From assembly GCF_963676685.1 (NCBI RefSeq), contig NC_092344.1, positions 22,692,001-22,756,000 of the forward strand: a DNA stretch of 64,000 nucleotides, in the 5' to 3' direction. Below, one piece after another: positions 37,381-62,392 of the stretch (its first letter is position 1; every line of letters starts with the position of its first letter). The translations under genes and the position numbers were made by a program. The DNA is from Mytilus edulis. Lineage: Eukaryota. The notes under the pieces are model-generated. The model saw only the letters and a program-made list of their open reading frames with translations, made no database searches and was not told the origin of the DNA.

Positions 37381-39190
37381 AAATGACAATTTCAGCACAA
37401 TTCAGCATTTCGTCTATCATCTTTCAACATTTTATAGGTAGGCAGAAACTGGAGCAAATTTGACAAAGGGCGGACCCAGCCATTTATAAAAGGGGGGGTG
37501 TAAACTAAATGTCCTTATTTCAAATGCATTGATTGTCAGAAAAAAAGGGGGATCCAACCAAGGGTTCGGAAATGGTCATATTTGCCAGTCTTGTCCTAAA
37601 CTGAAAGTATTTGTCCTAAATGAGTAATTGGGATTTAGGACAAATTTTATTTTTGAACAGAAATAATTTCGGTCAATTCGTTGAGATCGATTTTCTAAAT
37701 CACCATTTTGAAATTGTTTTTGTTTTGTTATCCCTCTCATGTAATGAAACTGCCACTCCAGTACAGTGTTATGTTCCTGAGGTCCCTCCTTATAACTTTA
37801 TTAATACCTCGGGGAAATATTGGCTAATGATTGCTAATCTCTTTACTCAAGTTTTTAATTCACACCTGGCTATTGATCACAAGCACAGAACAAATATTTT
37901 AAAGAAATTAAAATTCTATGTCTTTATTATTTAATTACTTTTCAGCTAAGACAATTGTCAATAATGATTTGAAATTAAAATATAACTTAATTCGATTTAA
38001 TTTACGTAGAATTTTTTTTTTTTAACCACTAAAACACGTGCTTTGTTTACTATGTAATACACATGCTTTAAATATTTTGATTAGACACTAAATTGAATAG
38101 GAAAGTTGTCTCATTGGCACTCATACCACATCTTCTTATATCTAAATCATCTTTATTGCACTAAATGCTGTTTAACAATCTACTGAGCTTACAGCATTGG
38201 GCTTAGTTTCCCTGCGTACTATCAAGGGGAATATCTAATGAACATATAGAAATGTTAGTATTATACAATTAAACATTAAACATAATTATAATAAAAATAA
38301 ACATAAATATACATTGATTCAAACGATTTTTTTTATGTCTGCTTACAGATTTACAACTTAAGGTTTTATGTTTCATGTGTGTTTACTTTCTCACAGGATA
38401 CCTGTAACCATATACATTGTATTGAAATATAAGTTTTTTTTGTACAAGGCTTAAAAACAGTTGCATTTCTATCCTGTTTGAGCTTAGTACCGGTACAAAT
38501 AAAATTTATATTTTGATATAATGTATGGTTTTTCTTTATATACTCCAACTCGAACAACTGTTTTATACGATTCATATGATTATACTTTTCAAAAAAATAG
38601 GAGTTATCTTCCTTTATCCAAAATTGTAGTTGAATCAACAACTTCTGTTTTTCTAATACTATAAGCAATAGGTCAACTAACTATATTTTGGTGTATGGAA
38701 TGATTTAAATGTGTACATATCTGTCTGGCAGGAATCATCTGCCTTTTGGTTTATTTTTATGGTTCATTTGTCAATGTTATGTTTCAGTAGTAAGATTCTT
38801 TTCAAAGATATTATTAGAAATAGCTCAATTGCATTTGGTGTATGTAATGCTTGTTAGATGACATATCTGCCTAGCTTGTTTTAAAAGATGTGAAAGGGAA
38901 ATGAAAAAGCAGTTAAGAAAAAGGTTTAGAAAAAATTAGCTTCTTTAGTATCACCATTATTTGACAGAAATTTAAATACAAACACCAGTAGTAAGCAGCA
39001 TTGTTGTAAATACATAAAATAGATGATACATGTGTATGGCTAAGATTTTAAGATATCAGATTCTATTCTGTAAAAGTAAGGTATTGTATATCAGTTTAAA
39101 GACAGATTTTCTTTTGTTATGTAAAGAACTTTACTAATAAATGTAAATTCAAATGTTTCAGGGTATATGCATATGATACCAATTGATAAT

Positions 39191-39411
39191 TACTGTAAAC
39201 CAACTAATTTTCGCGAGCGATTTATTTTCGCGACTTTCCCGAGTAGAAAAACAACATGAATATTTATCGTCGCGAATATGTAAAACTTCGATCTTTTGTT
39301 ATTAACCTACATTAAGTTAATTGAAAAATCGCAGAATTAAATAGTCGCGAATTGGAATAAAAAGGTAAAACGCGAAATAAAGTATCCGCGAAAATTAGTT
39401 GGTATACAGTA
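39191..39411. mobile_element. TA-flanked MITE (Tc1/mariner-like)
   Basis: tactgtaaaccaactaattttcgcg / cgcgaaaattagttggtatacagta TIRs; degenerate relatives at about 4134-4295 and 59780-59930. Confidence 0.8.
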
Positions 39412-42011: not shown

Positions 42012-42911
42012 ATGGTAAAGGATAGATTGCAAGAGATGCAGGAAAAGAGGGAAGAATATGAAAAAGAAAGTAAAAAGAAAAAGAAGAAGGGGAAAAGTGA
42101 GGACAATGGAGATATGAATGTGTTCATAGACAAAGTTAACATGGTGGAAAACCAGTTAGAAGAACTGAAAAAAGATGTTGCTCAAATTAAAAAGACACAA
42201 AGTAATTTATACTGCTCCCCGTTCGTTACTACTGCTAACTTACAAGATATGGAAAGTAAGGCAGATTCTATTATATCTAGTTCTAGTAAAATACGGAAAG
42301 ACATCCAACTCATAGCCGCTGAAAACTTTCCAAAATCACAAAAGGATTCGTTACTTAATACAAGTACTCAAGAACGTGTTCATACCTCACAGGTTGAAAG
42401 ACTGCAATATGAGTTGAGAGAAGCAATGAACGATTTTAGAACAAGTCAAGCTGATTATGTAGAGAAAACTAGAGCAAGGTTCCGAAGACAAATGGAAATT
42501 GTCAAAGATAGTAGTGAAATAAACGGAAATGAGCAAGGGGATAATTTTCAAAACCAAGCTCTGTTTACAGGGAATATTATATTAGAAATGCAACAAGCTA
42601 AGGGAGAATTGCAAATGATAGATGAACGAGAACAAGAACTACAACATTTAGAAGGTCAGATTCATGAAGTCAATAAACTATTTAAGGAAATGCATGTGTT
42701 AGTAGATGAACAGGGTGAAATGGTTGATAATATTGAAAAGAATATAGAAGAGGCTGTTGACGATGTTGAAAAAGGGAAAGGACAATTAACTGAGGCAGAA
42801 AAAAATCAAAAGAAAGCACGAAAAAAGAAAATTTGTTGTATTTCTATTGTAGCAGTTATTTTGATTATTATTATTATTATAGTGGCTGTAATGATCAGTC
42901 AAAATACATAA
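42012..42911 (+). CDS. Intronless syntaxin (Qa-SNARE, syntaxin-1/plasma-membrane-like), nested in OXCT1 intron 5
   Basis: 299-aa ORF: N-peptide MVKDRL, helical Habc-like region, SNARE motif with 0-layer Q (VDEQGEMVDNIE), polybasic KKARKKK, CC, C-terminal hydrophobic TM helix. Confidence 0.92.
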   Translation: MVKDRLQEMQEKREEYEKESKKKKKKGKSEDNGDMNVFIDKVNMVENQLEELKKDVAQIKKTQSNLYCSPFVTTANLQDMESKADSIISSSSKIRKDIQLIAAENFPKSQKDSLLNTSTQERVHTSQVERLQYELREAMNDFRTSQADYVEKTRARFRRQMEIVKDSSEINGNEQGDNFQNQALFTGNIILEMQQAKGELQMIDEREQELQHLEGQIHEVNKLFKEMHVLVDEQGEMVDNIEKNIEEAVDDVEKGKGQLTEAEKNQKKARKKKICCISIVAVILIIIIIIVAVMISQNT

Positions 42912-43794
42912 TAAATGGAGGTCCGAAATAGAAGTGCTTGGTGTGTGAATTTGTCCTAATGTGAGAAAGCTTCAGAACATATTGCAAATATACTACATGT
43001 ATTGAACTAATGTTCAAATAGTGGTTTTATATTGTTTAATGAGGGTCATATAGAATGTGCCAATACTCGTCAAGTGTTAAAACTGAAGGCATTATTTCAT
43101 ATCATGATTGTACAACACATTAAATTTAAAACCTTTAACAGCTTTGTTTATTGTACTTCATAGTACTTGGTAAAAGAACAAGGAAAATGTTTTGTCAATG
43201 AAAGGTCAAATTGTCATATATCAACAGTTACATTAATGATAATACCCTACTTGGGGAAAACAAACAGTTTCTTCCTGGCTCGCCTTATTGTATAACTTCC
43301 TTTGTATATATAGGTTTGGCTTTTAGTATAAAGTTTCTTGTGTAAGGGTAATTAGGGTAAGACGAAGGAGTAAATTAAATCTGTTTCCTTTACGTTTGAC
43401 ATAAACTTAAAAAATAACAAACTATTTTTAATAAGATAGGTTCATTGAATGTCATGGTTCAGAGGTGAAAGGAAGGAATTAACTGAAACTACTACACACA
43501 TTTAAAAGTGTTAGTTTAAAGTTTAATATCATGTAGAAATTAGGGCTCCTTTGGGAAAAAATAGAAAAAAATATTATTAAACAATTTGAAATGAATATTA
43601 CTGAAATTGATGTGATGGTAAAAATTTTTCTTTTATTAAATTCAAGTTTAAATTCTATGTTATTGCAACCAAACTAAAGTTGCAAATTCTTGTGCTTCAT
43701 GGGTTTAAACGTGGAGTCTAGGCCATTGCCTCTTCTATTATGACTGATGGTTTCAATTTTTTACTGTGCATTTTGGGTCTTGACTGTACTGTTT

Positions 43795-44200
43795 AGACCA
43801 CAAGCTTCAATGTTTGAACTGTGCTTTTTATGCCATTAACTGTGCTGTTAAGACTGCAGACATCAAGTTTTTGACTCTGCTGTGTAGACCTTTGACTGTG
43901 ATGTCAAGATATAAGCTTCAATGTTTTGACTGTGATGTCAAGATCACAAGCTTCAATGTTTTGACTGTGCTGTGTAGACCTTTGACTGTGATGTCAAGAT
44001 CACAAGCTTCAATGTTTTGACTGTGCTGTGTAGACCTTTGACTGTGATGTCAAGATCACAATCTTCAATGTTTTGACTGTGCTGTGTAGACCTTTGACTG
44101 TGATGTTAAGATCACAAGCTTCAATGTTTTGACTGTGCTGTGTAGACCTTTGACTGTGAATCTGATGTCAAGATCACAAGCTTCAATGTTTTGACTATGC
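43795..44200. repeat. 56-bp minisatellite downstream of the syntaxin gene
   Basis: Unit tcaatgttttgactgtgctgtgtagacctttgactgtgatgtcaagatcacaagct, about 5 good copies plus degenerate ones. Confidence 0.9.
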
Positions 44201-45569
44201 AGTCATCAAGGTCCCTATATGTGTTGTTAAGACCCCTTTTGTTTTTAAAACTCATGTTAAGCTTTACGAACTCTTTGTGTTGTTTATTGAATTTCTGTTG
44301 TTCCTGAAACCTGTGTTGTGTACATTGATACCATACCTGCTCTTTTGTTAATTAAGATTAAAGATTGAGAATTGTATGTATCATCCTGCTTTATTTCCTT
44401 CTTGAAAAACCTCCTTTTTACAGGATAACCACCCTTTGTTAAAGGAGTACAACATGTTTTTAGAGAAACATGTTACTGAATACAATTATATCAGCTGTTG
44501 CATTGATTTAGAAGAATTGTTAAACTTACTAAATTTGTAATGCATAAAAATGCATTGAACATACCAGCTTAATATCCAAAAGGCTTTGGCAGGCCAAAGC
44601 ATGGACATCTATAACTTTAGTATAACATTTTATATTTTAACTTCAAGAGAAATAATTCAAATGATTGTTAACTTGAATGAAACTCAAACTTGTTTGTAAT
44701 GATCCTGATACAACTTCAAAATGAATGATTAGAAATTGACAACGTACTAGCAGTAATTACCTATAAAAAAGGGAAGATGATTATTTATATTAAAGAAAGA
44801 CAGAGGATGGAATAAGTGACATTGATAAAAAAAATCTTTCAAATAAAACATAACATTTAAAAAAGTTGTGTGTCTGAGGCACTTTCCTTGATTTACCTTC
44901 ATCAGGAATTGTAAGCTAGCGATCAAACATAAAACTTTGAAAGCCAGGGATGTATTAATATGAAGAAACCATATGACCTATATGACCAAATGGGACATAA
45001 AATGAATAGCCAAGGGTCAGCTTAGGTCAACTTAGTCTGATGTTATCATTACTTATGATGATTTTATTTGTCACATCAAATAACTCGTGCTGTTTGACAT
45101 TAATTAATTTTCCATCTGTTATATAATGGAAATCAATATATTTGATCAGATATTTATTCAGATATTTATTCAAAATATTGTAGTTTATACTACAAAAGGA
45201 GTAAATAAATATATAAATAGTGATGCATATACATGTCAACAAATAATACAGACATTGAAATTTGCCTATGTGTTTACTGAAGGGATAATTACTCTATAAT
45301 ATATATTTATGAACACAACAAGAATTAAGTTAGGAAATTATAGTGTATTCTGTACGTTAAATTTATCTCTGATAAGTAAAACATTCCAATGGTTGACTGG
45401 GGAATAGAAATATGGTAGCCTGTCAGGACTTCTTCCATTTAGCACTAAAAAAAACCATGGTAAAGCAGAGTAAAATTAAGAATAGAAATGGGGAATGTGT
45501 CAAAGAGACAACAACCTGACCAAAGAGCTGAATACATCTGAAGGCCACCAATAGGTCTTCAACTTTAAC

Positions 45570-47738
45570 AGAGAATAGATTGTCTGTTTTGCTGTACCAG
45601 ATGTACAAATACACCTTAAAAGTCTAGTCTGAATGAAGATGTTAAGTCTGATGCCTTGACCTCGGCCTTGACACAGGGAGAATAGATTACCAGATGTACA
45701 AATACACCTGAAAGTCTAGTCTGAATGAAGATGTTAAGTCTGATGCCTTGACACAGGGAGAATAGATTGTCTGTTTTACTGTACCAGATGTACAAATAAA
45801 CCTGAAAGTCTAGTCTGAATGAGGATGTTAAGTCTGATGCCTTGACACAGGGAGAATAGATTGTCTGTTTTGCTGTACCAGATGTACAAATAAACCTGAA
45901 AGTCTAGTCTGAATGAGGATGTTAAGTCTGATGCCTTGACACAGGGAGAATAGATTGTCTGTTTTGCTATACCAGATGTACAAATACACCTGAAAGTCTA
46001 GTCTGAATGAGGATGTTAAGTCTGATGCCTTGACACAGGGAGAATAGATTGTCTGTTTTGCTGTACCAGATGTACAAATACACCTGAAAGTCAAGTCTGA
46101 ATGAGGATGTTAAGTCTGATGCCTTGATACAGGGAGAATAGATTGTCTGTTTTGCTGTACCAGATGTACAAATACACCTGAAAGTCTAGTCTGAATGAGG
46201 ATGTTAAGTCTGATGCCTTGACACAGGGAGAATAGATTGTCTGTTTTGCTATACCAGATGTACAAATACACCTGAAAGTCTAGTCTGAATGAGGATGTTA
46301 AGTCTGATGCCTTGACACAGGGAGAATAGATTGTTTGTTTTGCTGTACCAGATGTACAAATACACCTGAAAGTCAAGTCTGAATGAGGATGTTAAGTCTG
46401 ATGCCTTGATACAGGGAGAATAGATTGTCTGTTTTGCTGTTCCAGATGTACAAATACACCTGAAAGTCTAGTCTGAATGAGGATGTTAAGTCTGACGCCT
46501 TGACACAGGGAGAATAGATTGTCTGTTTTGCTGTACCAGATGTACAAATACACCTCCAAGTATAGTCTGAATGAGGATGTTAAGTCTGATGCCTTGACAC
46601 AGGGAGAATAGATTGTCTGTTTTGCTGTACAAGATGTACAAATACACCTGAAAGTCTAGTCTGAATGAGAATGTTAAGTCTGATGCCTTGACACAGGGAG
46701 AATAGATTGTCTGTTTTGCTGTACCAGATGTACAAATACACCTGAAAGTGTAGTCTGAATGAGGATGTTAAGTCTGATGCCCTGACACAGGGAGAATAGA
46801 TTGTCTGTTTTGCTGTACAAGATGTACAAATAAACCTGAAAGTCTAGTCTGAATGAGAATGTTAAGTCTGATGCCTTGACACAGGGAGAATAGATTGTCT
46901 GTTTTGCTGTACCAGATGTACAAATACACCTGAAAGTGTAGTCTGAATGAGGATGTTAAGTCTGATGCCCTGACACAGGGAGAATAGATTGTCTGTTTTC
47001 TTGTATCAGATGTACAAATACACCTGAAAGTCTAGTCTGAATGAGGATGTTAAGTCTGATGCCTTGACACAGGGAGAATAGATTGTCTGTTTTGTTGTAT
47101 CAGATGTACAAATACACCTGAAAGTCTAGTCTGAATGAGGATGTTAAGTCTGATGCCTTGACACAGGGAGAATAGATTGTCTGTTTTGTTGTATCAGATG
47201 TACAAATACACCTGAAAGTCTAGTCTGAATGAGGATGTTAAGTCTGATGCCTTGATACAGGGAGAATAGATTGTCTGTTTTACTGTACCAGATGTACAAA
47301 TACACCTGAAAGTCTAGTCTGAATGAGGATGTTAAATCTGATGCCTTGACACAGGGAGAATAGATTGTCTGTTTTGCTGTAACAGATGTACAAATAGTCA
47401 AATACACCTAAAAGTCTAGTCTGAATGAGGATGTTAAGTCAGATGCCTTGACACAGGGAGAATAGATTGTCTGTTTTGCTGTACCAGATGTACAAATACA
47501 TGTACACCTGAAAGTCTAGTCTGAATGAGGATGTTAAGTCTGATGCCTTGACACAGGGAGAATAGATTGTCTGTTTTCTTGTACCAGATGTACAAATACA
47601 CCTGAAAGTCTAGTCTGAATGAGGATGTTAAGTCTGATGCCTTGACACAGGGAGAATAGATTGTCTGTTTTGCTGTACCAGATGTACAAATACACCTGAA
47701 AGTCTAGTCTGAATGAGGATGTTAAATCTGATGCCTTG
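45570..47738. repeat. 94-bp tandem repeat, about 23 copies
   Basis: Unit gagaatagattgtctgttttgctgtaccagatgtacaaatacacctgaaagtctagtctgaatgaggatgttaagtctgatgccttgacacagg; spurious ORFs recur every 282 bp. Confidence 0.96.
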
Positions 47739-49173
47739 CAAAGGGAGAGAACGATGTTATCAATCTTGCTTGCAGCAACTGATTGAGGAGTCTATAAGTA
47801 TAAACTAATGTCACTATACATAAAACAAACAACAATCAATCATTTAGAATTGATACATGTGATAATGGAGAATTTGCAGACTTTCCATCCATATGTTTCT
47901 ATTTTCCATCACCTGATTCCTCAGTTGGAGTGATACTGATTTAAAAATGAAACAAAACATGATTGACAATTCTGAGTGTGTCTGAGCTTGTTAATCTGGA
48001 ACTCATCTAAAACAGCTCTACTGAATTCCACTTAACTTGCAGTCTTTCGTTTAAAGGTTTAAGTTGTGCACCAGCTAAATTAATATTATTTTTTACATCT
48101 GTACAGAAATAAGAAGATGTGGTATGACTGCCAATGAGAAAACTCACCACCAGACACCACATGTTAAAGTTGGTACTATGAGTCACTTTAAATCCTTCAA
48201 CAATGAACAAACCCCATATCCATTGAATTCCCATTCTAAATATTTATTTATAAAAATGGTGGCCACTCTGCATTTGGTGGCATACAACTTCTTTGAAAGA
48301 TATACACATACATGTATTGTTTTACAATGGACACTTATGGTGGCTTTCATTTGTATAAATGATTATTGGACGATAAAAGATGTCACAAATCCTATGGAAT
48401 ATTCTGAATAAACACAATATTTTATGGTAGTATTTATGTATGGTTTCATGAGGGTGTGACTTAGTATTTTTGTCATTTTTTGCTTAGGTATTCATCAAAG
48501 AGCTAATTCTAGTAATATGCATATATGATCTATAATGTTTTAATTATTGCACACTGTACATCACACCCATCACAAACAAGATAAATGTCATGTATTAAAA
48601 TAAACTGTCCCTAGGTGTAAGTGATACATTATGGTTAATCTTTAATCTTTAAATGGGATAAACAGTGGATTAATACAAACATAAATAAAACAGATATAGA
48701 TATATAGTGAAAACCACAAGATAAACAGACAAATACTATGATCTCACACTTTATGAAATTGACAGGGTTACTCATGTATTAGTAATCTTTTTATGGCAGT
48801 CTTCCTCTTAGAAAAACAAAGGTAAAGGTAAAACTCATTTATTGATAAGAATGACATCAAATATATACAATTGTGGTTAAAAATTTGAGACATTAATTCA
48901 TGAGCAAACATATTGCAAACAATTGCCTATTAAAATGCACTATGTTTCCAAGGATTGCCCATTAAAGCATTTCCGCTTATTTCCAATAGGGATCTTTTAT
49001 TGTATTACACTTGCATTTGTTAACTATGAGCTAAATGGCACAAATTAAGATGTTTTTCATTCAAATATTAAATCACTCTTCAATGATTTCTAAGATATAA
49101 CCTTAACTGGGCTTTGAAAACACCATGGTCTTTCATTGACTTTAATGAACTAGGAATAACATACCACATCTCC

Positions 49174-50414
49174 TTTTTAGCTCACCTGGCCTAAAAGGCC
49201 AAATGAGCTTTTCTCATCACTTGGCGTCCGGCATCCGGCGTCGTCCGTCGTCCGTCGTCCTCGTTAACTTTTACAAAAATGTTCTCCTCTGAAACTACTG
49301 GGCCAAATTAAACCAAACTTGGCCACAATCATCATTGGGGTATCTTGTTTAAAAAATATGTCCAGTGACCCGGCCAACCATCCAAGATGGCCACCATGGC
49401 TAAAAATAGAACATAGGGGTAAAATGCAGTTTTTGGCTTATAACTCAAAAACCAAAGCATTTAGAGCAAATCTGACATGGGGTAGAATTGTTAAACAGGT
49501 GAAGATCTATCTGCTCTGAAATTTTCAGATGAATCGGATAACCTGTTGTTGGGTTGCTGCCCCTGAATTGGTAATTTTAAGGAAATTTTGCTGTTTTTGG
49601 TTATTATCTTGAATATTATTATAGATAGAGATAAACAGTAAACAGCAATCATGTTCAGCAAAGTAAGATTTACAAATAAGTCAACATGACTGAAATGGTC
49701 AGTTGACCCCTTTAGGAGTTATTGCCCTTTATAGTCAATTTTTAACCATTTTTCGTAAATCTTAGTAATATTTTACAAAAATCTTCTCCTCTGAAACTAC
49801 TTGGCCAAATTAATCCAAACTTGGCCACAATCATCTTTTGGGTTAGTAGTTTGAAAAATGTGTCCGGTGACCCGGCCATCAAACCAAGATGGCCGCCATG
49901 GCTAAAAATAGAACATGGGGTAAAATGCAGTTTTTGGCTTATAACTCAAAACCCAAAGCATTTAGAGCAAATCTGACATGGGTTAAAATTGTTTATCAGG
50001 TCAATCTGCTCTGAAATTTTTAGATGAATCGGACAACCCGTTGTTGGGTTGCTGACCCTGAATTGTTAGTTTTAAGGAAATTTTGCTGTTTTTGGTCTTT
50101 ATCTTGAATATTATTATTGATAGAGAAAAACTGTAAACAACAATAATGTTCAGCAAAGTAAGATTTACAAATAAGTCAACATGACCGAAATGGTCAGTTG
50201 ACCCCCTTAGGAGTAATTGTTCTTTATAGTCTGAAACTAATGGGCCAAGTTCATTATAGATAGAGATAATTTTAAGCAACAAGAATGTTCAGTAAAGTAA
50301 GATGTACAAACACATCACCATCACCAAAACACAATTTTGTCATGAATCCATCTGCTTCCTTTAATATTCACATAGACCAAGAAGAGCGACACAGGCTCTT
50401 TAGAGCCTCTAGTT
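49174..50414 (+). mobile_element. Helentron/HINE-like element, full-length copy
   Basis: Head hairpin agctcacctggcc..ggcc...gagct, (cgtc)n tract, ~500-bp internal duplication, tail aggctctt.agagcctctagtt. Confidence 0.8.
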
Positions 50415-51487
50415 TTTGTCAGAAAGCTCGACATAGGGATAGTGATCCGGCGGCGACGGCTACGGCGGCGGTGTTAGCTAACTTCTTAAAAGCTTTATAT
50501 TTTAGAAGGTGGAAGACCTGGATGCTTCATACTTTGTATATAGATGTTTCATGTTACGAAGTTTCCGTCAGTCACATGTCCAATGTCCTTGACCTCATTT
50601 TCATGGTTCAGTGACCACTTGAAAAAAAAGTTCAGATTTTTTGTAATGATGAATTCTCTCTTATTATAAGTAATAGGATAACTATATTTGATATGTGCGT
50701 ACCTTGCAAGGTCCTCATGTCTGTCAGACAGTTTTCACTTGACCTTGACCTCATTTCATGGATCAGTGAACAAGGTTAAGTTTTGGTGGTCAAGTCCATA
50801 TCTCAGATACTATAAGCAATAGGGATTGTATATTTGGTGTATGGAAGGACTGTAAGGTGTACATGTCCAACTGGCAGGTGTCATCTGACCTTGACCTCAT
50901 TTTCATGGTTCAGTGGTTATAGTTAAATTTTTGTGTTTTGGTCTGTTTTTTTCATACTATATGCAATAGGTCTACTATATTTGTTGTATGGAATGATTGT
51001 AAGGTGTACATGTCTAGCGGGCAGATGTCATGTGACCATGACCTCATTTTCAAGGTTCAGTGGTCAAAGTTAAGTTTTTAAGTTTTGGTCTATTTATCTA
51101 ATACTATATGCCATAGGTCAACTATATTTGGTGTATGGAAATATTTTATGATCTTTTTTCAGTAGCGCAGGTTTCTTTTGACCATGACCTCATTTTCACG
51201 GTTCATTGCACAGTGTTAATTTTTTGTGTTTTGGTCTATTTTTCTTAAACTATAAGTAATAGGTCAACTATATATGTTGTATAGAAGCATTGTTAGCTGT
51301 ACATGTCTGCCTGGCATGGTTTATCTGACCTTGACCTCATTTTCATGGTTCATTGGTCTTTGTTTAGTTATCTTGGTTAATGTTAAGTTTATGAGACAGT
51401 TGTAATAAAGCTTTATACTTAAGACTATCAACATAATATCAATGATTAGTATAGAAGGCGAGACATTTCAGCGTGTGCACTCTTGTT
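50415..51487 (+). mobile_element. Second HINE-like element with (ggc)n tract and ~150-bp tandem core repeats (tgaccttgacctcattttcatggttca)
   Basis: About 6 core repeats, tail cactcttgttt; directly abuts the previous element. Confidence 0.7.
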
Positions 51488-52662
51488 TATATAAAGTATG
51501 TGTGACCATTAGATATATATAAGAAGATCTGGTATGAGTGTCAATGCGACTACTTTCCATCCAAATTACAATTTATAAAAGTAAACCATTATAGGTCAAA
51601 GTACAGTCTTCAACACAAAGTGAACAGCAAGCTATATATTCTTTAAGTTATTATTTAGAGGATAACTGTATTGCATTTTAAGCTCTGACAGCATTAATTG
51701 GTGATTTGATGGTCTCAAATTAAGATTACTGGTGATACATAAGGAGAGCCAGTAAACGGGTATTTGTGACCATCAAATCACCAATTGATGCCGTCAGAGC
51801 TTAAATACAATCTTGTTATCTCCATTCTAATGAAACTAACAGAAAACTACATCAAAACATCCATTTAAAGTCTGTACTTGCACATACTTTTCATAGCATC
51901 AGTTGTGAAATGATGCCATGAAAATTAGTGACGTTATCCAATCAAAATGTACAGTAAAAGCAAAGTAGCATTAGAATTAAAGATACATTGATTCAAAATC
52001 TATACAGAAGGAAATATTAATTACGACAAGACTAAAAAATTATACAAAAAAATATAACTTGACTTTAACAGAACACACTGTATTGTTTAATATTCAAGAT
52101 TTAAAAATTTGAGCTGGTTAAAATGGAAACTGCCCACCAGTTCATCTTTCACAAACCAAATCTTACACCAAGTTAATGCACCTTATGTGAAGTTTTAAAT
52201 CAATACCACCTCACTAGGGGCTCTATTTTAAGGTCACATTTACTCTGATGAAAAGATGGGGATCAGAGAGGTGGAGTACTATGACCTAAAGAAAGGTTGT
52301 TTTAAATAACACAACAGTTGAACTCAAAACTTTTAAATGCCTAATTATTCACTAAAAGTTACCTAGCATAAAATCTGTAAATGTATCTAAAGATTTGTGT
52401 TAATGTAAGTTAAGTTGTTGATTTTAATAGTACTTATAGATGAGATGAGGTGTGATGAAAAAAAAATTCTACAATAAAATATTTTTTTTTATTCAAAGGT
52501 GAAAACTTTAATATTTCCAAAACTCCTTCTTAAAAATAAAAAAAAAACAATCTTCTGTTTTATAAATTAAAACATTTGAAGGTACACTTTAAAGAAAATT
52601 TAACATTTAACCAGTAAATCACATATCAATACACATTAAAAAAAAAACACATTTTGTTACAG

Positions 52663-52769
52663 GTTCGGGATTTTAATGGATTTCAGTATATAATGGAAGA
52701 GGCCATCACAGGAGATTTTGGTCTGGTCAAAGCATGGAAAGCAGATAAGGCAGGGAATCTAACTTTCAG
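52663..52769 (+). CDS. OXCT1: OXCT1 exon 6 ([36 protein letters not shown])
   Basis: ttgttacag/gtgtct; conserved [19 protein letters not shown]. Confidence 0.95.
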
Positions 52770-53531
52770 GTGTCTATCTAATTGTCAAAGTTCTTAATTA
52801 ATCTTCATATACAGTTCCCCATAGAAAATATCACTGGTATTCCAGTGGAAACCAGTGGTATACCATTGGAATCCAGTGGTATACCACTGGACAACACTGG
52901 AATGACTTATTCCAGTGGTATTCCAGTGGAATTACCATTGAAATTCCAGTGGAAAGATGCATTCCACTGGAATTTTGAATAAATTATACCAGTGGAAAAA
53001 AAAATCAGTGGAATACCAGTGGGAAAAAAAATCAGTGGAATACCACTGGACCCCTGCGAGATGAAATTCATGAACTGATGATGAACCACCATGAACTGTC
53101 CATGAATGTTCATGAACAATGCATGACTGTTCATAATGAGTTCATTAAGTTTGTTCATGAATTTAGTTCATGAATAGTTCATAAAATGCAGTTCATGAAT
53201 ATTTTCTGAACTTTAATGAACTGTGAGTCAGTTCATAATGTTCATAAATTGTTCATAACACATGTTCATGAACATTTTATGAACTTTTAATGAATAAATG
53301 AATTCATTAAGTTCATAAATAATTTCATAAATTTGACTGTCATACAAGTTCTCATAAACATCTATACATTGTATTATGACATCACAATTAAAGTGCTTTT
53401 AGCATGACCTCCAGGTTATTCATTTACAGATCTTGAGATCATTTTGAGACAAAATTCAGTTGAATAGCAAAAGTGTAAATACATGTACATGTTTGTTTAT
53501 CAAAAAGCATTAAAAATATAAATATATAAAA

Positions 53532-53775
53532 AAGAAGATGTGGTATGATTGCCAATGAGACAACTATCCACAAAAGACCAAAATGACACAAACATCAACA
53601 ACTATAGGTCACCGTACGGCCTTCAACAATGAGCATTGAGCCCATACCGCATAGTCAGCTGTAAAAGGCCCCGATAAGACAATGTAAAACAATTCAAACG
53701 AGAAAACTAACGGCCTTATTTATGTGAAAAAATGAACGAAAAACAAATAACACATAAACAAAGACAACCACTGAT
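53532..53775 (+). mobile_element. Copy of the aagaagatgtggtatg dispersed repeat, nested inside the 53051-55757 element
   Basis: High similarity to 36515-36760. Confidence 0.8.
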
Positions 53776-53791
53776 ATACTCACTTTTGCTG

Positions 53792-53922
53792 TGCTGCGAC
53801 TCCCCAAAAGTTTAAAGAATTGAAACCAACTTTGGGACGTACATGTACATCTATACATGCTGCGACTCCCCAAAAGTTTAAAGAATTGAAACCAACTTTG
53901 GGACGTACATGTACATCTATAC
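53792..53922. repeat. 66-bp direct duplication
   Basis: tgctgcgactccccaaaagtttaaagaattgaaaccaactttgggacgtacatgtacatctataca occurs twice. Confidence 0.9.
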
Positions 53923-56900
53923 AGAGGGACAAGGGTAAAACGTATTGCCCCCTCCGCTATGGCAGAGGCAAAATTAAAAAAAAATCATACAGATTTGATT
54001 AGTTCCCTTTCACAGCATGCAGGTAGAGCCTCATATTACTTCAATACATGTGATACAAATGTGTTTACAAATGTAGTGTAAGCTTAAGTAATTATAAGCA
54101 AAAGTATGTCCATAAAAAATATTTCCTTTTCATTGAACAACAGAAATTAGCTCAGCACCTTTTTCTTTTTTTTTTCATACTACACCAGAAGAGTGTTACA
54201 TTTTGAGAGTCATACAAAATTTGGGACTAACTTTGAAGTTTTGTAACTTACTTTGAGCTGGAGATGTTTCTCATGTTTCGTTTTTACAATCATGACAATG
54301 GTAAACTTAATTTCTTTCTTCTAAAGATGTAATTTCTGATTGTCTCTCCAAGTTCAAACATGTGCCTTTCTTAACCATCATACGGCACATAGAGGAACTT
54401 GGAAACAAAGCCCAGATTAATGACAATTAATTCTTTCCCAAACATTGCAGACCGGTGTCAATAATTATCATATTTAATGAATTACGTTTACCTATTGTAA
54501 AACGCTTCAATGACTTTGACAAAAGATTGCAATGCAGACAAATGATTACAAGTGACTGGGATTAGAAAAACGTCATAATTACGTCAGCAAAATGGTGGTT
54601 TTGACGCTTACAATACAAATGAAGATGAAGTAATATAGCTGTCAAAATAAAGCAGATTTGTTATCAGATAAGTAAATTATATATATTTTTGATTTTTTTT
54701 TTTTGCTGAATAACTATTTGTTGAAGCATTATAATAATTATTGATTAATTATAATAAATATAAAACACCAGAAAGTGAAAGTAACCTGTTGGTTTAATGT
54801 TTTCCATTCAGGAATAACTGATAGATTTGTACAATATATTTTATTTCAAGGTAAACATAATTCATGCTTTAGCCATTCTTATGATTGTGTGTGGGCAAAT
54901 TAAAAGGGGAAAAGGGGGGGGGGGGGGGTACATTATTTGAAATGTCATGAAAAGGCAAGTAGTATTCATGTTATTAATCTTACTCTATTGATATTTTAAT
55001 AAAAACAACAATTATTAAATTAAATTATTACATTGTATTATACCTGTTAGAAACTGTTTAATCTTGAGTGTTTATTTAAAACAAATATCAAGGACTTTTG
55101 ATTCTTTGTGGAGTGATTTTTGATTTTGCAGGGGGAAACTTAGATGCATTTATTGATTAAAAGATCTGTTCAACTGGGAAGAATTTCAAGCAGAACAACT
55201 TCACCAAGATGTTATGTAGCATTTCTAGTTGGAAGTCCAGCAATTTCAATTACAGACAGGAAGAGAAGTTTACTTATGATAATAACACAAAAATGAATAT
55301 TCAAGAAAATCCTTTTTAATAATTTCATGAACTTTAGATGAACAGTTCATGAACACAGTAGTTCATGTGTTCATGAATGATTCATGGACTGGTATATTTC
55401 ATGAACAAATTCATGAATCATTCATAAAAAATTCATGAACTATACATGAACAGGACATGAACTACAAATGGACAAGCGTGTTCATGAACTATAAAATCAT
55501 GAACAATTCATGAATAATAAAAGTTCAAGAACTATTTTTGTTCATGAACTTTAGTGAACCAAAGAGTTCATGAACACTTTCTGTTCATGAATAGTTCATT
55601 ATTCACTGGTTCATGAACATGCATGTCCATTTGTAGTTCATGTCTAGTTCATTAACTGTTCATGAATCTTTTATGAACAATTCATGAATTGTGTTCATGA
55701 ATCATTCATGAATCATCCATGAACATTCATGAATTATTCATAATCATTTCGCAGGGGGGTCACTATCAAAAGGAAAAAAAAATATCTTATTTTAAATGTA
55801 CATATAATTAAGTTATAATTGAACAAACAATATAATATATAACAAACAACATGCCCTTTTTAAATTTATATAATTTAAGTAAATCTATATGAATTATAAA
55901 CATAAATACTGATACAATGCATAGATCCCAAATGACATATGTACATTTCTAATTACAAAATAAAAAAATACAAAATTAACGTGTAATAATTGAACAAACA
56001 ATATATATAAGGCCTAAAACCAGAGGCTCCCTGGAGCCTGGAGCCGCACACCTGGTAACCTGTTGGATACCCAACAGAAGCAACCGTCCATGTTTTTTGA
56101 CAAATTGGAACAAAATGAGCAATCTTTTCCCCTAGGGTCCAATGTTAAACTATGTTCCCTGCTGGTGGCCATAATGGATCAGGTGTGGACATGTCGGATA
56201 CAATTTTTAAAGAAAACCACCTAAGGACCATTGTCACCAAGTTTGGTTCCAACTGGTACAGTAGATTCAGAAGAGGAGATCTTTGAATACATTTTCCCAA
56301 AATGGCATCCATCTTGGATCATGTGTGGACATGACGGATACAATTTTGAAATGGGACCGCTCAAAGACTTTTGTGACCAAGTTTGGTTCCAATTGGCCAA
56401 GCGGTTTCAGAGGTGTAGAAAACAATAGGGGCATCCTCAGGGGTTTTCTTCAGAGCAAGGGATGACGGAGATCCCTCTCAATTAATGCCCCTTCAAAAAT
56501 GGTGTATTCTTTAATACAATTTAAGAACAAGGCGGGCTTGTGATTATATCCCCATCTGAACAAATTTTCTGAAGAAAACGCTGATCCTATGTCTCATAAC
56601 TTTTTAGTTTTTTATTTAAATTGGAATTTTCATGCAGTATAATTTTTATAGTGTGGATATTATAATTGCTTCATTATATTTGTACTTTCAGTAGAAATGA
56701 ATTTTTTATAGTGAAGATTAAAGAATGATCATACCACAAAGATTTATGGTTGTTTTTGTTAAACTGTGAGTTAGCATGATGCATGATTTACTGAAACCCT
56801 AATTTCCAAAACAAGTACTGTGACCGCAAATTATTCAATACAACAATTTTTTATTGGAATTCCACTGGAGAGAAATTGTCTGGCATTCCACTGATCTACT

Positions 56901-57992
56901 GGAATTCCACTGATTGACCAGTGATAATTCCAGTGGAATCTACTGGAATTCCACTGATTTACCAGTGATAATTCCAGTGGAATCAACTGAAATTCCACTG
57001 ATTTACCAGTGAAGATTCCAGTAGATCAGTGGAATGCCAGAGAAAATACCACTGGAATTCCACTGGAACTTGTTGCATTCCACTGGAGTTACCACTGGTA
57101 ATTCAGTGGAATTCCAGTAGATCAGTGGAATGCCAGACATTTTTTACCGCTGGATTCCACTGGAATTCCACTGGAATCCAGTGGTTAATCCACTGATTTT
57201 GCCAGTGGCTTTCCAGTGGAATTCCACTGGGATTTTGTCATCTTTTTCTATGGGGTTATTTATATTAACAAATCTTCATAAAAAGTTATTAATATTAATA
57301 AATCTTCATATACAGTTATTAATGTTAATAAAATTTATTGCAGAAATTATTGGATATTTCTGATACTTCACTTTTGAGTAATTCAGTTTTATATATTAAA
57401 ATAATTTATATCGCAGTCTGTCATTAAGTAAATAACCCACCTTTATAACACATGGTATAACATGGTAATTGTTGTTTTTATTGAAACACCTGTGTTATAT
57501 TTTCAAAGGATTTTGTGTAAGTGCATTGATTAAATGTTAACAATATCACTTTTATCAAAAGAAAAAAATGTTTTTATTATCTTTTAGGCAAATGCTCTAT
57601 AGAATTAAAAACAGAAATAAGGAATGTGTCAAAGAGACCACAACTGGCTCAAAATGCATATAAAAAGCCAAGGTCACCAATGGGTCTTCAACACAGCAAG
57701 AAAATCCTGCACTCTTAGGCAGGCTTCATCTGACCACTAAACAATATTCTTTACTAGTTAAGTGAATATAGACTTCACACTACTCTCAGAAGCGTATAAA
57801 TGAACTAGAATTAAAAAAAACCCATACAAGACTAAAAAAAGATAGAGGCTCCTGACTTTGGAGAAGCGCAAAAAATTTTCTGATATGAATTAAACAGGAT
57901 TTTCCTCAATATAGTAGAAATTAAAATTACATTTTAGTCTAAAATAACAAAATCACATGCATGCAAAAATTTCTGAAATTCCAGTAATTGAA

Positions 57993-58202
57993 TACTGTAA
58001 ATTCAGAAATTATTGCAAGGTTTTTATTATTGCGAAATATGTGACAGAGTTGTAAACGCAATAATTTCAACTCCCATTTTGAAATATTTTACATGAATTT
58101 AACTGGATTTTTTTCAAAATCATAAAAATTTAAATTGCATTTAAGTCTTAAATGACAAAATCGCAATAATAAATGCACGCAATAATTTCTGAATTTACAG
58201 TA
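57993..58202. mobile_element. TA-flanked MITE
   Basis: Perfect 24-bp inverted ends tactgtaaattcagaaattattgc / gcaataatttctgaatttacagta. Confidence 0.85.
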
Positions 58203-58531
58203 AGTAGTTTTAGCATCATTACAAAGTATGTAGTCACTACAATCAGAAATGACGAAAACACATACCCTTATGCAGAACACAAGTTTTGATTAAGTTTGTT
58301 AGCTTCAAACAAATTAAGATTCCATTTTTATACAACCGGTGAAGATAGAAAATGCTTCCATCAAATTTTATGAAACTTGTAAGGAGTTTTTTTTTATCGC
58401 ATTATGTGCACCTTGCACAGTTGTTAATTTTTTCCTTGTAGTTCTTTAAAATTTATTTGAAACAAAATTTAAAGGTTTTCTGTAAAATCCTATCTGAAAC
58501 AAAATTAAAAATGGCGACATTTTTCTTTTAG

Positions 58532-58700
58532 GAAAACAGCAAGAAATTTCAATCCTCCTATGTGTAAGGCAGCTAAGATAACTATAGCAGAGGTGGAGGA
58601 GATTGTCCCATGTGGTGCTATAGCCCCAGAGGATGTCCATGTACCACATGCCTTTGTACAAAGAGTTATCAAAGGACCTAAATATGAGAAACGAATAGAG
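58532..58700 (+). CDS. OXCT1: OXCT1 exon 7 ([15 protein letters not shown]...YEKRIE)
   Basis: ttcttttag/gtagat; ARNFN.PMCKAA motif. Confidence 0.95.
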
Positions 58701-59367
58701 GTAGATAATTTTAATCATCATAATCAGATGTTTGAGTTAAAGTTTTGGTAAATCCAGAAAAGCACTTCCAACACTTTGAAAGGATTGTTTTCTTTTCATT
58801 GATCAACAAAATTAAGAAAATAGTTGTATTCATATGTTATTCTTGAAGTTAGACATGTGTTGAGCTAAATCCAACATGTAAATTTATTATCAAAATTATC
58901 ACATCTTCCTATATCTAGGACACCAAATTAACATGTATCATGGTACATGTAATAAGTTTTTGAGCTGTAAGAATGAGTTGTAATGTCAAAATTTTTATTG
59001 AAAAGTACGAATTCATATGAGGTACAAAAACATATGAATAGACCTTAAAGCAATATATTCAATAACATTGATTTAAAGAGATGATGAGGAAAATTTTGAT
59101 CTCCTTAGGAGTAGACATGTCCTAAGGATTTAGATTTACTCAAAACAGAAAAGTCACCCCTAAAATGGAGAGATAGCAACAGATATGTCAGGTTTATATG
59201 CAACTCATGTTTTTACCAGAATTTTTACACAATATGATTGAAATAATTCTACAGATGGACAAAGGAACCAACAAAAAACTGTTAAATAGATGAATATTCT
59301 TATTTTCAACTAAGTTTTACCCACAAAAAAAAGTAAATAGTATTGACATTTCATCAATTAATTTCAG

Positions 59368-59482
59368 AGATTGAAACTTCGTAAAGAAAAAGGCAGCACC
59401 ACTCATGCTACTGATCCAGCATCACTTATGAGGGAAAGAATAATCAGGAGGGCAGCACTAGAATTCCATGATGGTATCTATG
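59368..59482 (+). CDS. OXCT1: OXCT1 exon 8 (RLKLRKEK...RERIIRRAALEFHDGIY)
   Basis: atttcag/gtatgt; RERIIxRAALEF motif. Confidence 0.93.
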
Positions 59483-59947
59483 GTATGTCTGTTTACCATA
59501 TGTAATATTTAAATAATAATTCGGCAAATGGGGAAAGATGATAAAACAATAAAAAAGGAGACTTGTACAGTTCATGATGTGGTTCTTTGTACATGTTTGT
59601 AAGTAAAACATTCTTGTCTTGTCACTGTTTATGTCAAAGCTGTTTTTATGAATGAAAGTATGTATGTGTTCATTGTCAGAGATTTACAGTTTTTATTCTT
59701 ATGTTCAAACATATAATTAATGTCAGTTTTCAAATGTTGGTAAAAATAAACAGTGATCACATTTGTATTTATAAATCTAAACTGTAAACCAATTATTTTC
59801 ATGAGTGATTTATTTATGTGGTTTTCACGAGTAGAAAAATTACATGAATATTAATTGTCACAATGATTATATTAAACTTAGAACATAAATTAATGTAAAC
59901 ACTTGAAAAATAAATTGCAGGAAAGTCATTTGAAAAGGCTTAACACA

Positions 59948-60240
59948 AAACAAGAATTTGTCCATTGTACACTAATGCCCAGATTGTACTATCATTTTCT
60001 ATGTCCAGTGGACCGTGAAATTTGGGTCAAAACTCTAATTTGGCATTAAAATTAGAAATATCATATCATAAGGAACATCTGTACTTAGTTTCAAGTTGAT
60101 AGGACTTCAACTTCATCAAAACTATTTTTAACAAAAACTTTAACCTGAAGCGGGACAAACCGAAAGACGAATGGACGGACAAATAGATGATTGAATAGAC
60201 GCACAGACAAGAAAACATAATGCCCATAAATGGGGATAAA
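59948..60240 (-). mobile_element. HINE-like element, same family as 35882-36353, with one core repeat
   Basis: Reverse-complement similarity (ttaacctgaagcgggaca, gaaaacataatgccc). Confidence 0.7.
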
Positions 60241-60310
60241 AAAATGGTATCTGCTAAAAATAAATTGGTTTACACTTATTTTGGCTTTGTTCTGCAGATT
60301 AAAGGTTATA

Positions 60311-61641
60311 TTTGTTTTCTTCACAGCAAACCTTGGGATTGGTATGCCTATGTTAGCCAGTAATTATGTTTGTTTTCTTCACAGCAAACCTTGGTATTGG
60401 TATGCCAATGTTAGCCAGTAATTATGTTTGTTTTACCCACAGCAAACCTTGGGATTGGTATGCCAATGTTAGCCAGTAATTATGTTTGTTTTCTTCACAA
60501 CAAACCTTGGTATTGGTATGCCTATGTTAGCCAGTAATTATGTTTGTTTTCTCCACAGCAAACCTTGGTATTGGTATGCCTATGTTAGCCAGTAATTATG
60601 TTTGTTTTCTTCACAGCAAACCTTGGGATTGGTATGCCTATGTTAGCCAGTAATTATGTTTGTTTTCTCCACAGCAAACCTTGGTATTGGTATGCCTATG
60701 TTAGCCAGTAATTATGTTTGTTTTCTTCACAGCAAACCTTGGGATTGGTATGCCTATGTTAACCAGTAATTATGTTTGTTTTTCCACAGCAAACCTTGGT
60801 ATTGGTATGCCTATGTTAGCCAGTAATTATGTTTGTTTTCTCCACAGCAAACCTTGGTATTGGTATGCCTATGTTAGCCAGTAATTATGTTTGTTTTCTC
60901 CACAGCAAACCTTGGTATTGGTATGCCTATGTTAGCCAGTAATTATGTTTGTTTTCTTCACAGCAAACCTTGGGATTGGTATGCCTATGTTAACCAGTAA
61001 TTATGTTTGTTTTCTCCACAGCAAACCTTGGTATTGGTATGCCTATGTTAGCCAGTAATTATGTTTGTTTTCTTCACAACAAACCTTGGTATTGGTATGC
61101 CTATGTTAGCCAGTAATTATGTTTGTTTTCTCCACAGCAAACCTTGGTATTGGTATGCCTATGTTAGCCAGTAATTATGTTTGTTTTCTTCACAGCAAAC
61201 CTTGGGATTGGTATGCATATGTTAGCCAGTAATTATGTTTGTTTTCTCCACAGCAAACCTTGGTATTGGTATGCCTATGTTAGCCAGTAATTATGTTTGT
61301 TTTCTTCACAGCAAACCTTGGGATTGGTATGCCTATGTTAACCAGTAATTATGTTTGTTTTCTCCACAGCAAACCTTGGTATTGGTATGCCTATGTTAGC
61401 CAGTAATTATGTTTGTTTTCTCCATAGCAAACCTTGGTATTGGTATGCCTATGTTAACCAGTAATTATGTTTGTTTTCTCCACAGCAAACCTTGGTATTG
61501 GTATGCCTATGTTAGCCAGTAATTATGTTTGTTTTCTCCACAGCAAACCTTGGTATTGGTATGCCTATGTTAGCCAGTAATATGTTTGTTTTCTCCACAG
61601 CAAACCTTGGTATTGGTATGCCTATGTTAGCCAGTAATTAT
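60311..61641 (+). repeat. 58-bp tandem array (23 units); each unit is the polypyrimidine tract, the AG acceptor and the first ~41 nt of OXCT1 exon 9
   Basis: Unit gtttgttttctccacag|caaaccttggtattggtatgcctatgttagccagtaattat; the last unit runs into the real exon. Confidence 0.95.
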
Positions 61642-61695
61642 ATAACACCAGGAATGACAGTACATTTACAGAGTGAAAATGGAATTTTGGGATTG
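61601..61695 (+). CDS. OXCT1: OXCT1 exon 9 ([32 protein letters not shown]), contains the catalytic Glu (SENG)
   Basis: ctccacag/gtaact; NLGIG and QSENG motifs. Confidence 0.93.
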
Positions 61696-62270: not shown

Positions 62271-62392
62271 GGTCCATTTCCAGCACAAGGAGAGGTAGAT
62301 CCAGACCTAATTAATGCTGGTAAAGAAACGGTAACAAGTATTCCTGGTAGTTCTTTCTTTTCCAGTGATGAATCTTTTGCAATGATCAGAGG
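62271..62392 (+). CDS. OXCT1: OXCT1 exon 10 ([41 protein letters not shown])
   Basis: tactctag/gtaggt; [11 protein letters not shown] and [12 protein letters not shown] motifs. Confidence 0.95.

What the first reader, a model, noticed from the sequence alone, without database searches (positions are those of the whole stretch)
60311..61641. 23-copy tandem array of the splice acceptor of the OXCT1 catalytic exon
Seen: the 58-bp unit is exactly the exon 9 polypyrimidine tract, the AG and the first ~41 coding nt ([14 protein letters not shown]). Acceptor positions run from 60326 to 61600; 21 of 23 retain AG (AA at 60500 and 61079). Only the last copy continues into the rest of the exon with the SENG motif. 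Because 58 is not a multiple of 3, splicing to intact copies among units 1-21 shifts frame and hits cagTAA in the following unit. Established: the SENG glutamate is the SCOT catalytic residue, and premature stops usually trigger NMD. Inference: either the spliceosome skips about 20 near-identical upstream acceptors (exon definition from the single downstream donor), or array length tunes the fraction of productive OXCT1 mRNA, a VNTR rheostat on ketone-body use. Each unit also contains GT motifs (g|gtattg, g|gtatgc) that could allow micro-exons or re-splicing.
Basis: partly seen in the sequence, partly recalled or inferred. Interest (0 to 1): 0.8.

Follow-up and report, generated by a model that had tools for sequence, protein, structure and literature searches.

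The report
Copied splice acceptors in mussel OXCT1
An intron of a mussel's only ketone-body enzyme gene (SCOT/OXCT1) ends in 22 extra tandem copies of the next exon's splice acceptor and first 41 bases, but the RNA uses only the last, genuine copy, so this is one more tolerated "mirage" minisatellite, not a shown expression dial.

Summary
The array has a 58-bp unit in 23 copies at 95% identity (60306-61641). Each unit is the intron's last 17 nt plus the first 41 nt of the exon that carries the SCOT catalytic glutamate. AG is kept in 21 of 23 copies. Acceptors 1-21 run into TAA; acceptor 22 would add 19 residues in frame.

The array is real. It occurs once in the 1.37-Gb genome. Short DNA contigs that cross unit-to-unit junctions occur far above single-copy depth in two independent runs under other organism labels.

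A PacBio cDNA contig joins exon 8 directly to the last acceptor (61601). Raw RNA-seq gives depth 0 across 60374-61501, against about 17-36x on the exons. So the decoys are silent in steady-state RNA, at under roughly 2-11% depending on which decoy. The "VNTR rheostat" has no support, but decoy use hidden by NMD is not excluded.

This kind is already known: amphioxus "mirage" minisatellites, including acceptor-side ones, and the human F7, CBS and IFI6 donor-side VNTRs. This scan has already reported many such arrays elsewhere in this same mussel genome.

Verdict: a new member of a known kind, of low to moderate interest.

The parts
58525..58700 (+). OXCT1/SCOT exon 7 (end of the first CoA_trans domain)
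   Evidence: PF01144 match at window 58512-58673. The RNA joint 58698->59366 (cut +2, GT..AG) has 35 reads. Loose ends at 58525 mark the exon start.
59368..59482 (+). Exon 8 (115 nt); its donor is ATG|GTATGT at 59482|59483
   Evidence: RNA joints and X19 contig pieces; sequence. The exon ends in phase 1.
59483..61600 (+). Intron 8 (2118 nt); 1290 nt of it (61%) is array
   Evidence: The X19 cDNA contig record 9 is continuous from 59481/2 to 61600/1.
59947..60246 (.). Interspersed repeat (about 300 bp, over 4500 candidate copies at 82-85% identity) with an (ACGG/ACGA)-like microsatellite. It lies about 60 nt upstream of the array and is not part of it.
   Evidence: 40 of 40 scored copies match query positions 8-286/307. 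DNA word depth is 10^5-10^6. No consistent adjacent arrays at 11 other copies.
60306..61641 (+). 58-bp minisatellite, 23 units. Each unit is 17 nt of intron end plus AG, then the first 41 nt of exon 9. TTATAT stands at both original breakpoints (60306-60311 and 61638-61643).
60311..61600 (+). 22 decoy acceptor units (exon-like starts 60327...61544). Units 5, 7, 10, 11, 13, 15, 17, 19 and 21 are identical to the used acceptor over -20..+41.
   Evidence: RNA depth is 0 over 60374-61501.
60499..60500 (+). AG->AA in unit 4
   Evidence: The same change occurs in unit 14, ten units on.
61078..61079 (+). AG->AA in unit 14, a copy of the unit-4 mutation carried by a 10-unit internal duplication
   Evidence: In one search the query 60311-60720 matches again at +579 nt with 98% identity. 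In one search a shift of 10 units gives the highest identity (0.974).
61544..61600 (+). Unit 22, 57 nt after a 1-nt deletion. It is the only decoy whose use would stay in frame (+19 aa, no stop).
61601..61695 (+). Exon 9 (95 nt), the acceptor actually used (AG at 61599-61600). It encodes [32 protein letters not shown].
   Evidence: X19 contig piece 61600-61694; the joint 61694->62270 (cut +1, GT..AG) has 20 reads. Alignment to SCOT 280-311.
61675..61677 (+). GAA codon of the SENG glutamate, aligned with Glu305 of pig SCOT
   Evidence: Alignment. That Glu305 is the catalytic residue is established knowledge, not tested here.
62271..62392 (+). Exon 10 ([18 protein letters not shown]...)
   Evidence: Single copy in the genome.

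Best explanation
This is a 'mirage'-type minisatellite, a tandem amplification of a 58-bp segment that straddles the intron 8/exon 9 boundary of the mussel's single SCOT/OXCT1 gene.

Origin (inferred): a first duplication arose between two TTATAT microhomologies 58 bp apart. The array then grew by unequal exchange in blocks of 2 and 10 units.

Consequence (shown): the 22 upstream copies, including their 41 exon-derived bases, are now simply part of intron 8. The spliceosome pairs the exon 8 donor with the last acceptor, the only one followed by the rest of the exon and its donor 95 nt downstream.

Mechanism of choice (inferred): nine decoys are identical to the real site from -20 to +41, so the choice cannot be made by the local 3' splice-site sequence. 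It must come from what lies beyond +41, that is, exon definition by the unique exon body and the nearby 5' splice site.

The array is most likely a tolerated, length-variable, functionally neutral insert.
For: The array anatomy is confirmed.

It is unique in the genome, so it is not a dispersed satellite or transposon.

It is real in other samples. Contigs of 56-60 nt that cross unit junctions occur in DNA runs X3 (organism B) and X10 (organism C), at depths of 146 and 279 against about 31 and 6 for the flanks.

RNA evidence:
- PacBio cDNA contig X19 record 9 runs exon 7, exon 8, 61600/1..61694, exon 10 with no extra letters.
- Raw reads X24 give depth 0 over 60374-61501, while the exons stand at about 17-36x.
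- No inserted letters are listed at the junction.

Acceptors are identical over -20..+41.

Higher-order periodicity and the copied AG->AA mutation point to unequal exchange.

Exons 9 and 10 are single copy, so this gene has to work.

The same repeat type, with undisturbed splicing, is described in amphioxus, including an acceptor-side globin case, and on the donor side in human F7 and other genes. Earlier scan notes report many further cases in this genome (unchecked by me).
Against: - The exon 8->9 joint itself is not among the rows printed for the raw reads (19 joints not shown). For X24 the case therefore rests on the depth profile, and for the junction on one Logan contig of a PacBio run.
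- Steady-state RNA cannot see products removed by NMD.
- Use of acceptor 22 (in frame, 57 nt) falls in the same depth bin as the exon start and is bounded only loosely.
- It is not proven that the RNA individuals carried a long array.
- Neutrality is an inference from silence, not a measurement.
Confidence: 0.75

Rival explanations
1. VNTR rheostat. A sizeable share of pre-mRNAs is spliced to decoy acceptors 1-21, acquires a TAA and is destroyed by NMD. Array length would then set the yield of productive OXCT1 mRNA.
For: 21 decoys keep AG, and nine are identical to the real site over -20..+41. All of units 1-21 give a premature stop. Depth ratios suggest that array length differs between samples. 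For the human CBS 31-bp boundary VNTR, the title of a paper in the reference list seen reports an association with reduced CBS activity; I did not read that paper.
Against: There are zero RNA reads over 60374-61501 at 17-36x exon depth. This bounds steady-state decoy isoforms at roughly 2-11%. NMD rarely removes everything. Published mirage and F7-type arrays leave splicing undisturbed.
Confidence: 0.12
2. Stepwise removal, or micro-exons. The array is taken out in several steps, or contributes 9- or 15-nt micro-exons, through the GT motifs inside each unit (TTG|GTATTG, TTG|GTATGC).
For: The motifs exist in every T-type unit. GTATGC resembles the gene's own exon 8 donor GTATGT. Micro-exons of 9 or 15 nt would stay in frame.
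Against: The acceptor junction is AG|CAAACC, not AG|GT, so the first step would not regenerate a 5' splice site. The cDNA contig has no extra letters between exons 8 and 9, and no inserted letters are listed for the raw reads. Nothing requires such steps.
Confidence: 0.05
3. Regulated alternative acceptor. Unit 22 is used in some tissues to make a SCOT isoform with a 19-residue insertion ahead of the catalytic loop.
For: Unit 22 is 57 nt, so it is in frame and free of stops. In human IFI6 and CBS the one or two pseudo-sites nearest the exon are used.
Against: The bin 61502-61642 holds no more RNA than the 42 exonic bases account for (about 702 base-reads, against about 940 expected from the depth of the neighbouring exon part). 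The cDNA contig starts the exon at 61600/1. An insertion inside a conserved active-site segment is unlikely to be functional (inference).
Confidence: 0.04
4. Assembly artefact. The array, or its size, is produced by mis-assembly.
For: Tandem arrays are error-prone, and the published amphioxus globin mirage was mis-assembled in the draft genome. Short-read contigs cannot confirm the number 23.
Against: Unit-to-unit junction contigs occur at many times single-copy depth in two independent DNA runs from other studies and organism labels. Internal variants form an ordered 2-unit and 10-unit pattern, which is not typical of a collapse artefact.
Confidence: 0.03

Closest known systems
Amphioxus 'mirage' minisatellites (Adh3, troponin C, globin BflGb6/BflGb9, PGBD5)
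   Same: They are tandem repeats whose unit spans an exon-intron boundary and carries the splice signal. BflGb6 is acceptor-side: the 3' end of the intron plus the 5' part of exon 2. The authentic copy sits at the array edge, regular splicing is not disturbed, and the arrays show length instability and concerted evolution.
   Different: The phylum differs (mollusc against cephalochordate). There are far more copies here: 23, against 3-6 in BflGb6. The exon here encodes the catalytic residue of a single-copy metabolic enzyme. Length polymorphism is only suggested here, not shown.
Human F7 IVS7 37-bp VNTR and related donor-side boundary minisatellites (IFI6/6-16, CBS 31-bp, LMNB2, PDGFA)
   Same: A minisatellite reiterates a splice junction, giving several pseudo-sites identical to the authentic one. 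In F7, LMNB2 and PDGFA only the site contiguous with the exon is used.
   Different: Those arrays reiterate the 5' splice site and the first copy is used; here the 3' splice site is reiterated and the last copy is used. The 5'->3' scanning proposed for F7 cannot explain the choice of the last acceptor. A mirror-image, exon-anchored rule can. In IFI6 and CBS the nearest pseudo-sites are also used, which is not seen here.
Other splice-junction minisatellites in this same mussel genome
   Same: The architecture is the same: acceptor plus exon start in tandem, with the last copy used. The notes report this for nidogen, TBCD, PCM1, LIPE, QTRT1, RINT1, UNG and a receptor gene, and donor-side arrays in ASCC3, DPM1 and others.
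   Different: They are unrelated sequences and genes. I did not re-examine those loci.
Intron gain or growth by tandem duplication across proto-splice sites (Rogers model; segmental duplication generating an intron)
   Same: Tandem duplication turns exon-derived sequence into intron because only one of the duplicated splice sites is used (abstract seen; discussion).
   Different: No new intron is created here. An existing intron is lengthened by about 1.27 kb.

Membership tests
'Mirage' (splice-junction) minisatellite | Head-to-tail tandem repeat with a minisatellite-size unit | tested here: met
   58 bp x 23.1 copies, 95% identity
'Mirage' (splice-junction) minisatellite | The unit spans an exon-intron boundary and carries the splice signal | tested here: met
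   17 nt of intron end with AG plus 41 nt of exon 9. The boundary is fixed by RNA at 61600|61601.
'Mirage' (splice-junction) minisatellite | The authentic copy is the edge copy contiguous with the exon body | tested here: met
   Only unit 23 continues into the rest of the exon
'Mirage' (splice-junction) minisatellite | Regular splicing is not disturbed | tested here: met
   The cDNA contig joins exon 8 to 61601, and RNA depth is 0 inside the array. This is steady-state RNA only.
'Mirage' (splice-junction) minisatellite | Length polymorphism or instability | tested here: inconclusive
   A consensus junction contig stands at about 45x flank depth in X10, while its 31-mers occur about 10x in the reference array. 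Depth is a poor proxy for copy number, and no long reads were available.
SCOT / OXCT1 (succinyl-CoA:3-ketoacid CoA transferase, CoA_trans PF01144) | Two CoA_trans domains in one gene, with the SENG glutamate segment | tested here: met
   Four exons match PF01144 above the cut-off. Exon 9 aligns to SCOT 280-311, E = 1.6e-12. C-terminal exons carrying the NAGK, DLANW, GGAMD and LPLTG motifs lie downstream.
Recursive splice site (ratchet point) | AG|GT juxtaposition that regenerates a 5' splice site after the first step | tested here: not met
   Every unit reads AG|CAAACC
Donor-side boundary VNTR of the F7, CBS or IFI6 type | The reiterated element is the 5' splice site at the start of the intron | tested here: not met
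   The reiterated element is the 3' splice site at the end of the intron. The principle is the same, on the opposite side.
Dispersed satellite or transposon-borne tandem repeat | The same unit occurs at other loci, or the array lies inside a mobile element | tested here: not met
   The only genomic matches are within this array. The neighbouring interspersed repeat ends about 60 nt before it, and 11 other copies have no consistent adjacent array.

The most novel reading that the evidence does not exclude
Mussel minisatellites may be born preferentially at splice junctions by a transcription- or splicing-coupled DNA process, and this array would be one product. Alternatively, array length at such loci may lower productive mRNA through decoy splicing plus NMD. 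At this locus both remain open. Two tandem arrays in this one gene straddle its own junctions (exon 5 donor, exon 9 acceptor). My back-of-envelope estimate gives about 0.3 expected from unit sizes and junction density; it was not computed with a tool and rests on about 20 assumed junctions, since exons 1-6 were never mapped. Products cleared by NMD cannot be seen in the RNA I had.
Probability: 0.12. Interest if true: 0.65.

Novelty: new member of a known kind. Interest (0 to 1): 0.27.

Why it matters
This array alone changes little. OXCT1 is spliced normally, and the repeat type is known from the literature and from this scan.

Its value is as a clean natural experiment. Nine decoy 3' splice sites, identical to the real one from -20 to +41, lie 58 nt apart upstream of it and stay silent. 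Selection therefore depends on sequence beyond +41, meaning the exon body and the donor. This is the mirror image of the human F7 donor case, and it argues against a simple first-come 5'->3' choice of acceptors in this animal.

Together with the many similar arrays in this genome, it adds one RNA-checked data point. The open question it bears on is why mussel minisatellites sit so often on splice junctions.

Tried and rejected
1. Dispersed satellite or TE cargo: rejected. The unit occurs only here in 1.37 Gb.
2. Array seeded by the adjacent interspersed repeat (59947-60246, with an ACGG-like microsatellite): no support. The element ends about 60 nt before the array, and 11 other copies show no consistent neighbouring array.
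3. A second SCOT gene that would relax constraint: none found for exons 9 and 10 or for PF01144. The sensitivity of the first-look filter is limited.
4. Recursive splicing: the AG|GT requirement is not met.
5. Micro-exons or in-frame use of unit 22: not seen, but only loosely bounded.
6. A scan of metagenome contigs for the unit junction gave 0 hits.
7. The 22-bp x 17 array at 32898-33279 was checked as a possible further junction array. It is purely intronic, 225 nt from the next exon.
8. Generic literature searches for acceptor-side boundary VNTRs were unproductive. The term 'mirage' came from earlier scan notes, and I then verified it in two papers. The original Adh3 paper is not in the searchable library.
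9. Copy number in other samples could only be guessed from contig depth. The reads tool warns that depth is not copy number.

Full report
**Observation**

The stretch 60306-61641 is a single tandem array: period 58, 23.1 copies, 95% matches, no indels, score 2455.
- The anchor CAAACCTTGG occurs 23 times, at 60327...61601. Spacing is 58 nt, except 57 nt at unit 8->9 (one T lost in the pyrimidine tract) and at unit 22->23 (one T lost in the exon-derived part).
- Each unit is 17 nt of intron end (pyrimidine tract plus AG) followed by the first 41 nt of the exon.
- AG is kept in 21 of 23 units. AA stands at 60499-60500 and 61078-61079.

**The gene**

- PF01144 (CoA_trans) matches four exons of one gene in this window and nowhere else in the 1.37-Gb assembly.
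- The 32 residues read from the last unit onward align over their whole length to pig and human succinyl-CoA:3-ketoacid CoA transferase residues 280-311, including SENG (E = 1.6e-12).
- That this glutamate (Glu305 in pig numbering) forms the CoA thioester is established knowledge, not tested here.
- Downstream exons with further SCOT motifs follow at 62271 and beyond the window.
- Exons 9 and 10 are single copy in the genome, so this appears to be the animal's only SCOT gene and must be expressed correctly.
- The animal is a mollusc by the labels of the runs that hold the sequence. Earlier notes of this scan call it a blue mussel, Mytilus; I did not verify the species.
- Exons were searched one at a time.

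**Consequences of each acceptor**

I read the contiguous genomic sequence in the exon-9 frame.
- Acceptors 1-21 meet TAA after 31 codons, or 50 for unit 8, whose 57-nt length delays the shift.
- Acceptor 22 stays open because its unit is 57 nt. It would insert 19 residues just ahead of the catalytic segment.
- Nine decoys (units 5, 7, 10, 11, 13, 15, 17, 19, 21) are identical to the genuine site from -20 to +41. Unit 22 is identical from -20 to +38.
- Each unit also offers plausible branch-point-like sequence (CAGTAAT, ATTAT) 18-22 nt before the next AG. This is my reading of the sequence and is not tested.

**Is the array real?**

- It occurs only here in the genome, so it is not a dispersed satellite.
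- Two DNA runs from other studies and other organism labels were laid on the region: X3 (organism B) and X10 (organism C). Their flanks are covered by long contigs with about 0.6% differences.
- Inside the array there are 56-60-nt contigs that cross unit-to-unit junctions, at word depths of 146 (X3) and 279 (X10). Flank depths are about 31 and about 6.
- The 31-mers of the X10 contig occur about 10 times in the reference array, so that sample may carry a longer array. The tool warns that such depths are not copy numbers, so I treat length polymorphism as suggested, not shown.
- An assembly artefact as the origin of the array is effectively excluded. The exact count of 23 cannot be checked with short-read contigs.

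**RNA**

- The stranded raw reads of X24 (organism B) and a 2083-nt contig of a PacBio cDNA run (X19, record 9) define the exons. Exon 7 ends at 58700, exon 8 is 59368-59482, exon 9 is 61601-61695, and exon 10 starts at 62271. All junctions are GT..AG.
- In the X19 contig the pieces 59366-59481 and 61600-61694 are adjacent in the record (positions 1101-1216 and 1006-1100). So exon 8 is joined directly to the last acceptor, with one copy of the 41-nt segment and no extra letters.
- X24 gives depth 0.00 in all eight bins from 60374 to 61501. The exons stand at about 36x (exons 7 and 8) and about 17-26x (exons 9 and 10).
- The bin that holds unit 22 and the first 42 exon bases contains no more signal than the exon part explains.
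- No inserted letters are listed at the junction.
- Limits: the 8->9 joint is not among the printed rows for X24 (19 joints were not shown). Steady-state RNA cannot show products cleared by NMD. It is not proven that the RNA individuals carry a long array.
- From zero reads I estimate that decoy isoforms make up less than about 2% (if mid-array acceptors were used) to about 11% (if only unit 21 were used) of steady-state transcripts.

**History of the array**

- The hexamer TTATAT stands at 60306-60311 and again at 61638-61643. In a one-unit ancestor these lie exactly one unit apart, which fits a first duplication by slippage at microhomology (inference). The internal junctions read TTATGT, one substitution away.
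- Units fall into two types: cttcacag...GGG and ctccacag...GGT, both coding for glycine.
- Identity is higher at even shifts (0.967-0.974) than at odd shifts (0.953-0.956), and highest at a shift of 10 units.
- Consistent with this, 60311-60720 matches again 579 nt further on at 98%.
- The two AG->AA units are exactly ten units apart, so they are one mutation copied by a block duplication.
- This is the usual signature of growth by unequal exchange.

**Mechanism**

- Shown: only the exon-contiguous acceptor appears in mature RNA.
- Inferred: because local sequence is identical among ten sites, the decision must rest on what follows +41. That is the unique 54 nt of exon body and the donor at 61696, in other words exon definition.
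- A first-come 5'->3' choice of acceptor would have picked unit 1.

**Comparison with what is known**

- Minisatellites that reiterate a splice junction are described for human F7 (37 bp, 5-9 copies, only the first donor used), IFI6, CBS, LMNB2 and PDGFA.
- Tandem repeats spanning exon-intron boundaries were named 'mirages' in amphioxus (Adh3, troponin C, globins, PGBD5).
- The globin BflGb6 case is acceptor-side and, like the others, does not disturb splicing and varies in length between haplotypes.
- The word 'mirage' reached me through earlier notes of this scan, and I then verified it in those two papers.
- The same notes list at least eight other acceptor-side and several donor-side arrays in this same genome. 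In them, where RNA was available, only the genuine edge copy is used. I did not re-examine those loci.
- In this very gene a second, two-copy duplication carries the end of exon 5 with its GGTAAGT donor (37193-37380).
- I found no paper on such arrays in Mytilus. That is not proof that none exists.

**Rejected leads**

- The interspersed repeat 59947-60246 has over 4500 candidate copies. It ends about 60 nt before the array, and 11 other copies have no consistent adjacent array.
- The 22-bp array at 32898-33279 is purely intronic.
- Recursive splicing needs AG|GT, which the units lack.
- A metagenome scan for the unit junction found nothing.

**Verdict**

The second (expression rheostat) is unsupported but not excluded.
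- The structure is a new member of a known kind that is common in this genome. Interest is low to moderate, and lies mainly in its use as a clean natural test of 3' splice-site choice.

Noticed in passing
window 59947-60246: An interspersed repeat of about 300 bp lies inside intron 8. It has over 4500 candidate copies genome-wide at 82-85% identity and an internal (ACGG/ACGA)-like microsatellite. RNA reads from other copies pile up on it in the orientation opposite to the OXCT1 reads.
   Followed up: partly
window 37193-37380: A two-copy 99-bp tandem duplication carries the end of an OXCT1 exon plus its GGTAAGT donor.
   Followed up: no
window 63641-63998 (and 63260-63324): A 30-bp minisatellite (about 11 copies, with a 94-bp higher-order period) lies in intron 10 and runs to the end of the window.
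   Followed up: no
window 45571-47748; 15963-16835; 22168-23035; 32898-33279: Four further large minisatellites (94 bp x 23, 27 bp x 32, 70 bp x 12, 22 bp x 17) lie in or near the same gene. The last was checked and is purely intronic. The 70-bp unit contains a GTAAG motif, and I did not test whether it derives from an exon end.
   Followed up: partly
window 59483-59559 (RNA run X19): A contig from the cDNA library runs from exon 8 for 77 nt into intron 8 and then continues for 255 or more nt unlike the reference. It is either an unspliced transcript from an allele with a different intron or genomic DNA carry-over.
   Followed up: no
window 61544-61600: The decoy unit nearest the real acceptor is the only one shortened to 57 nt. 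Mis-splicing to it would therefore be in frame instead of meeting a stop. Whether this is chance or selected is unknown.
   Followed up: partly
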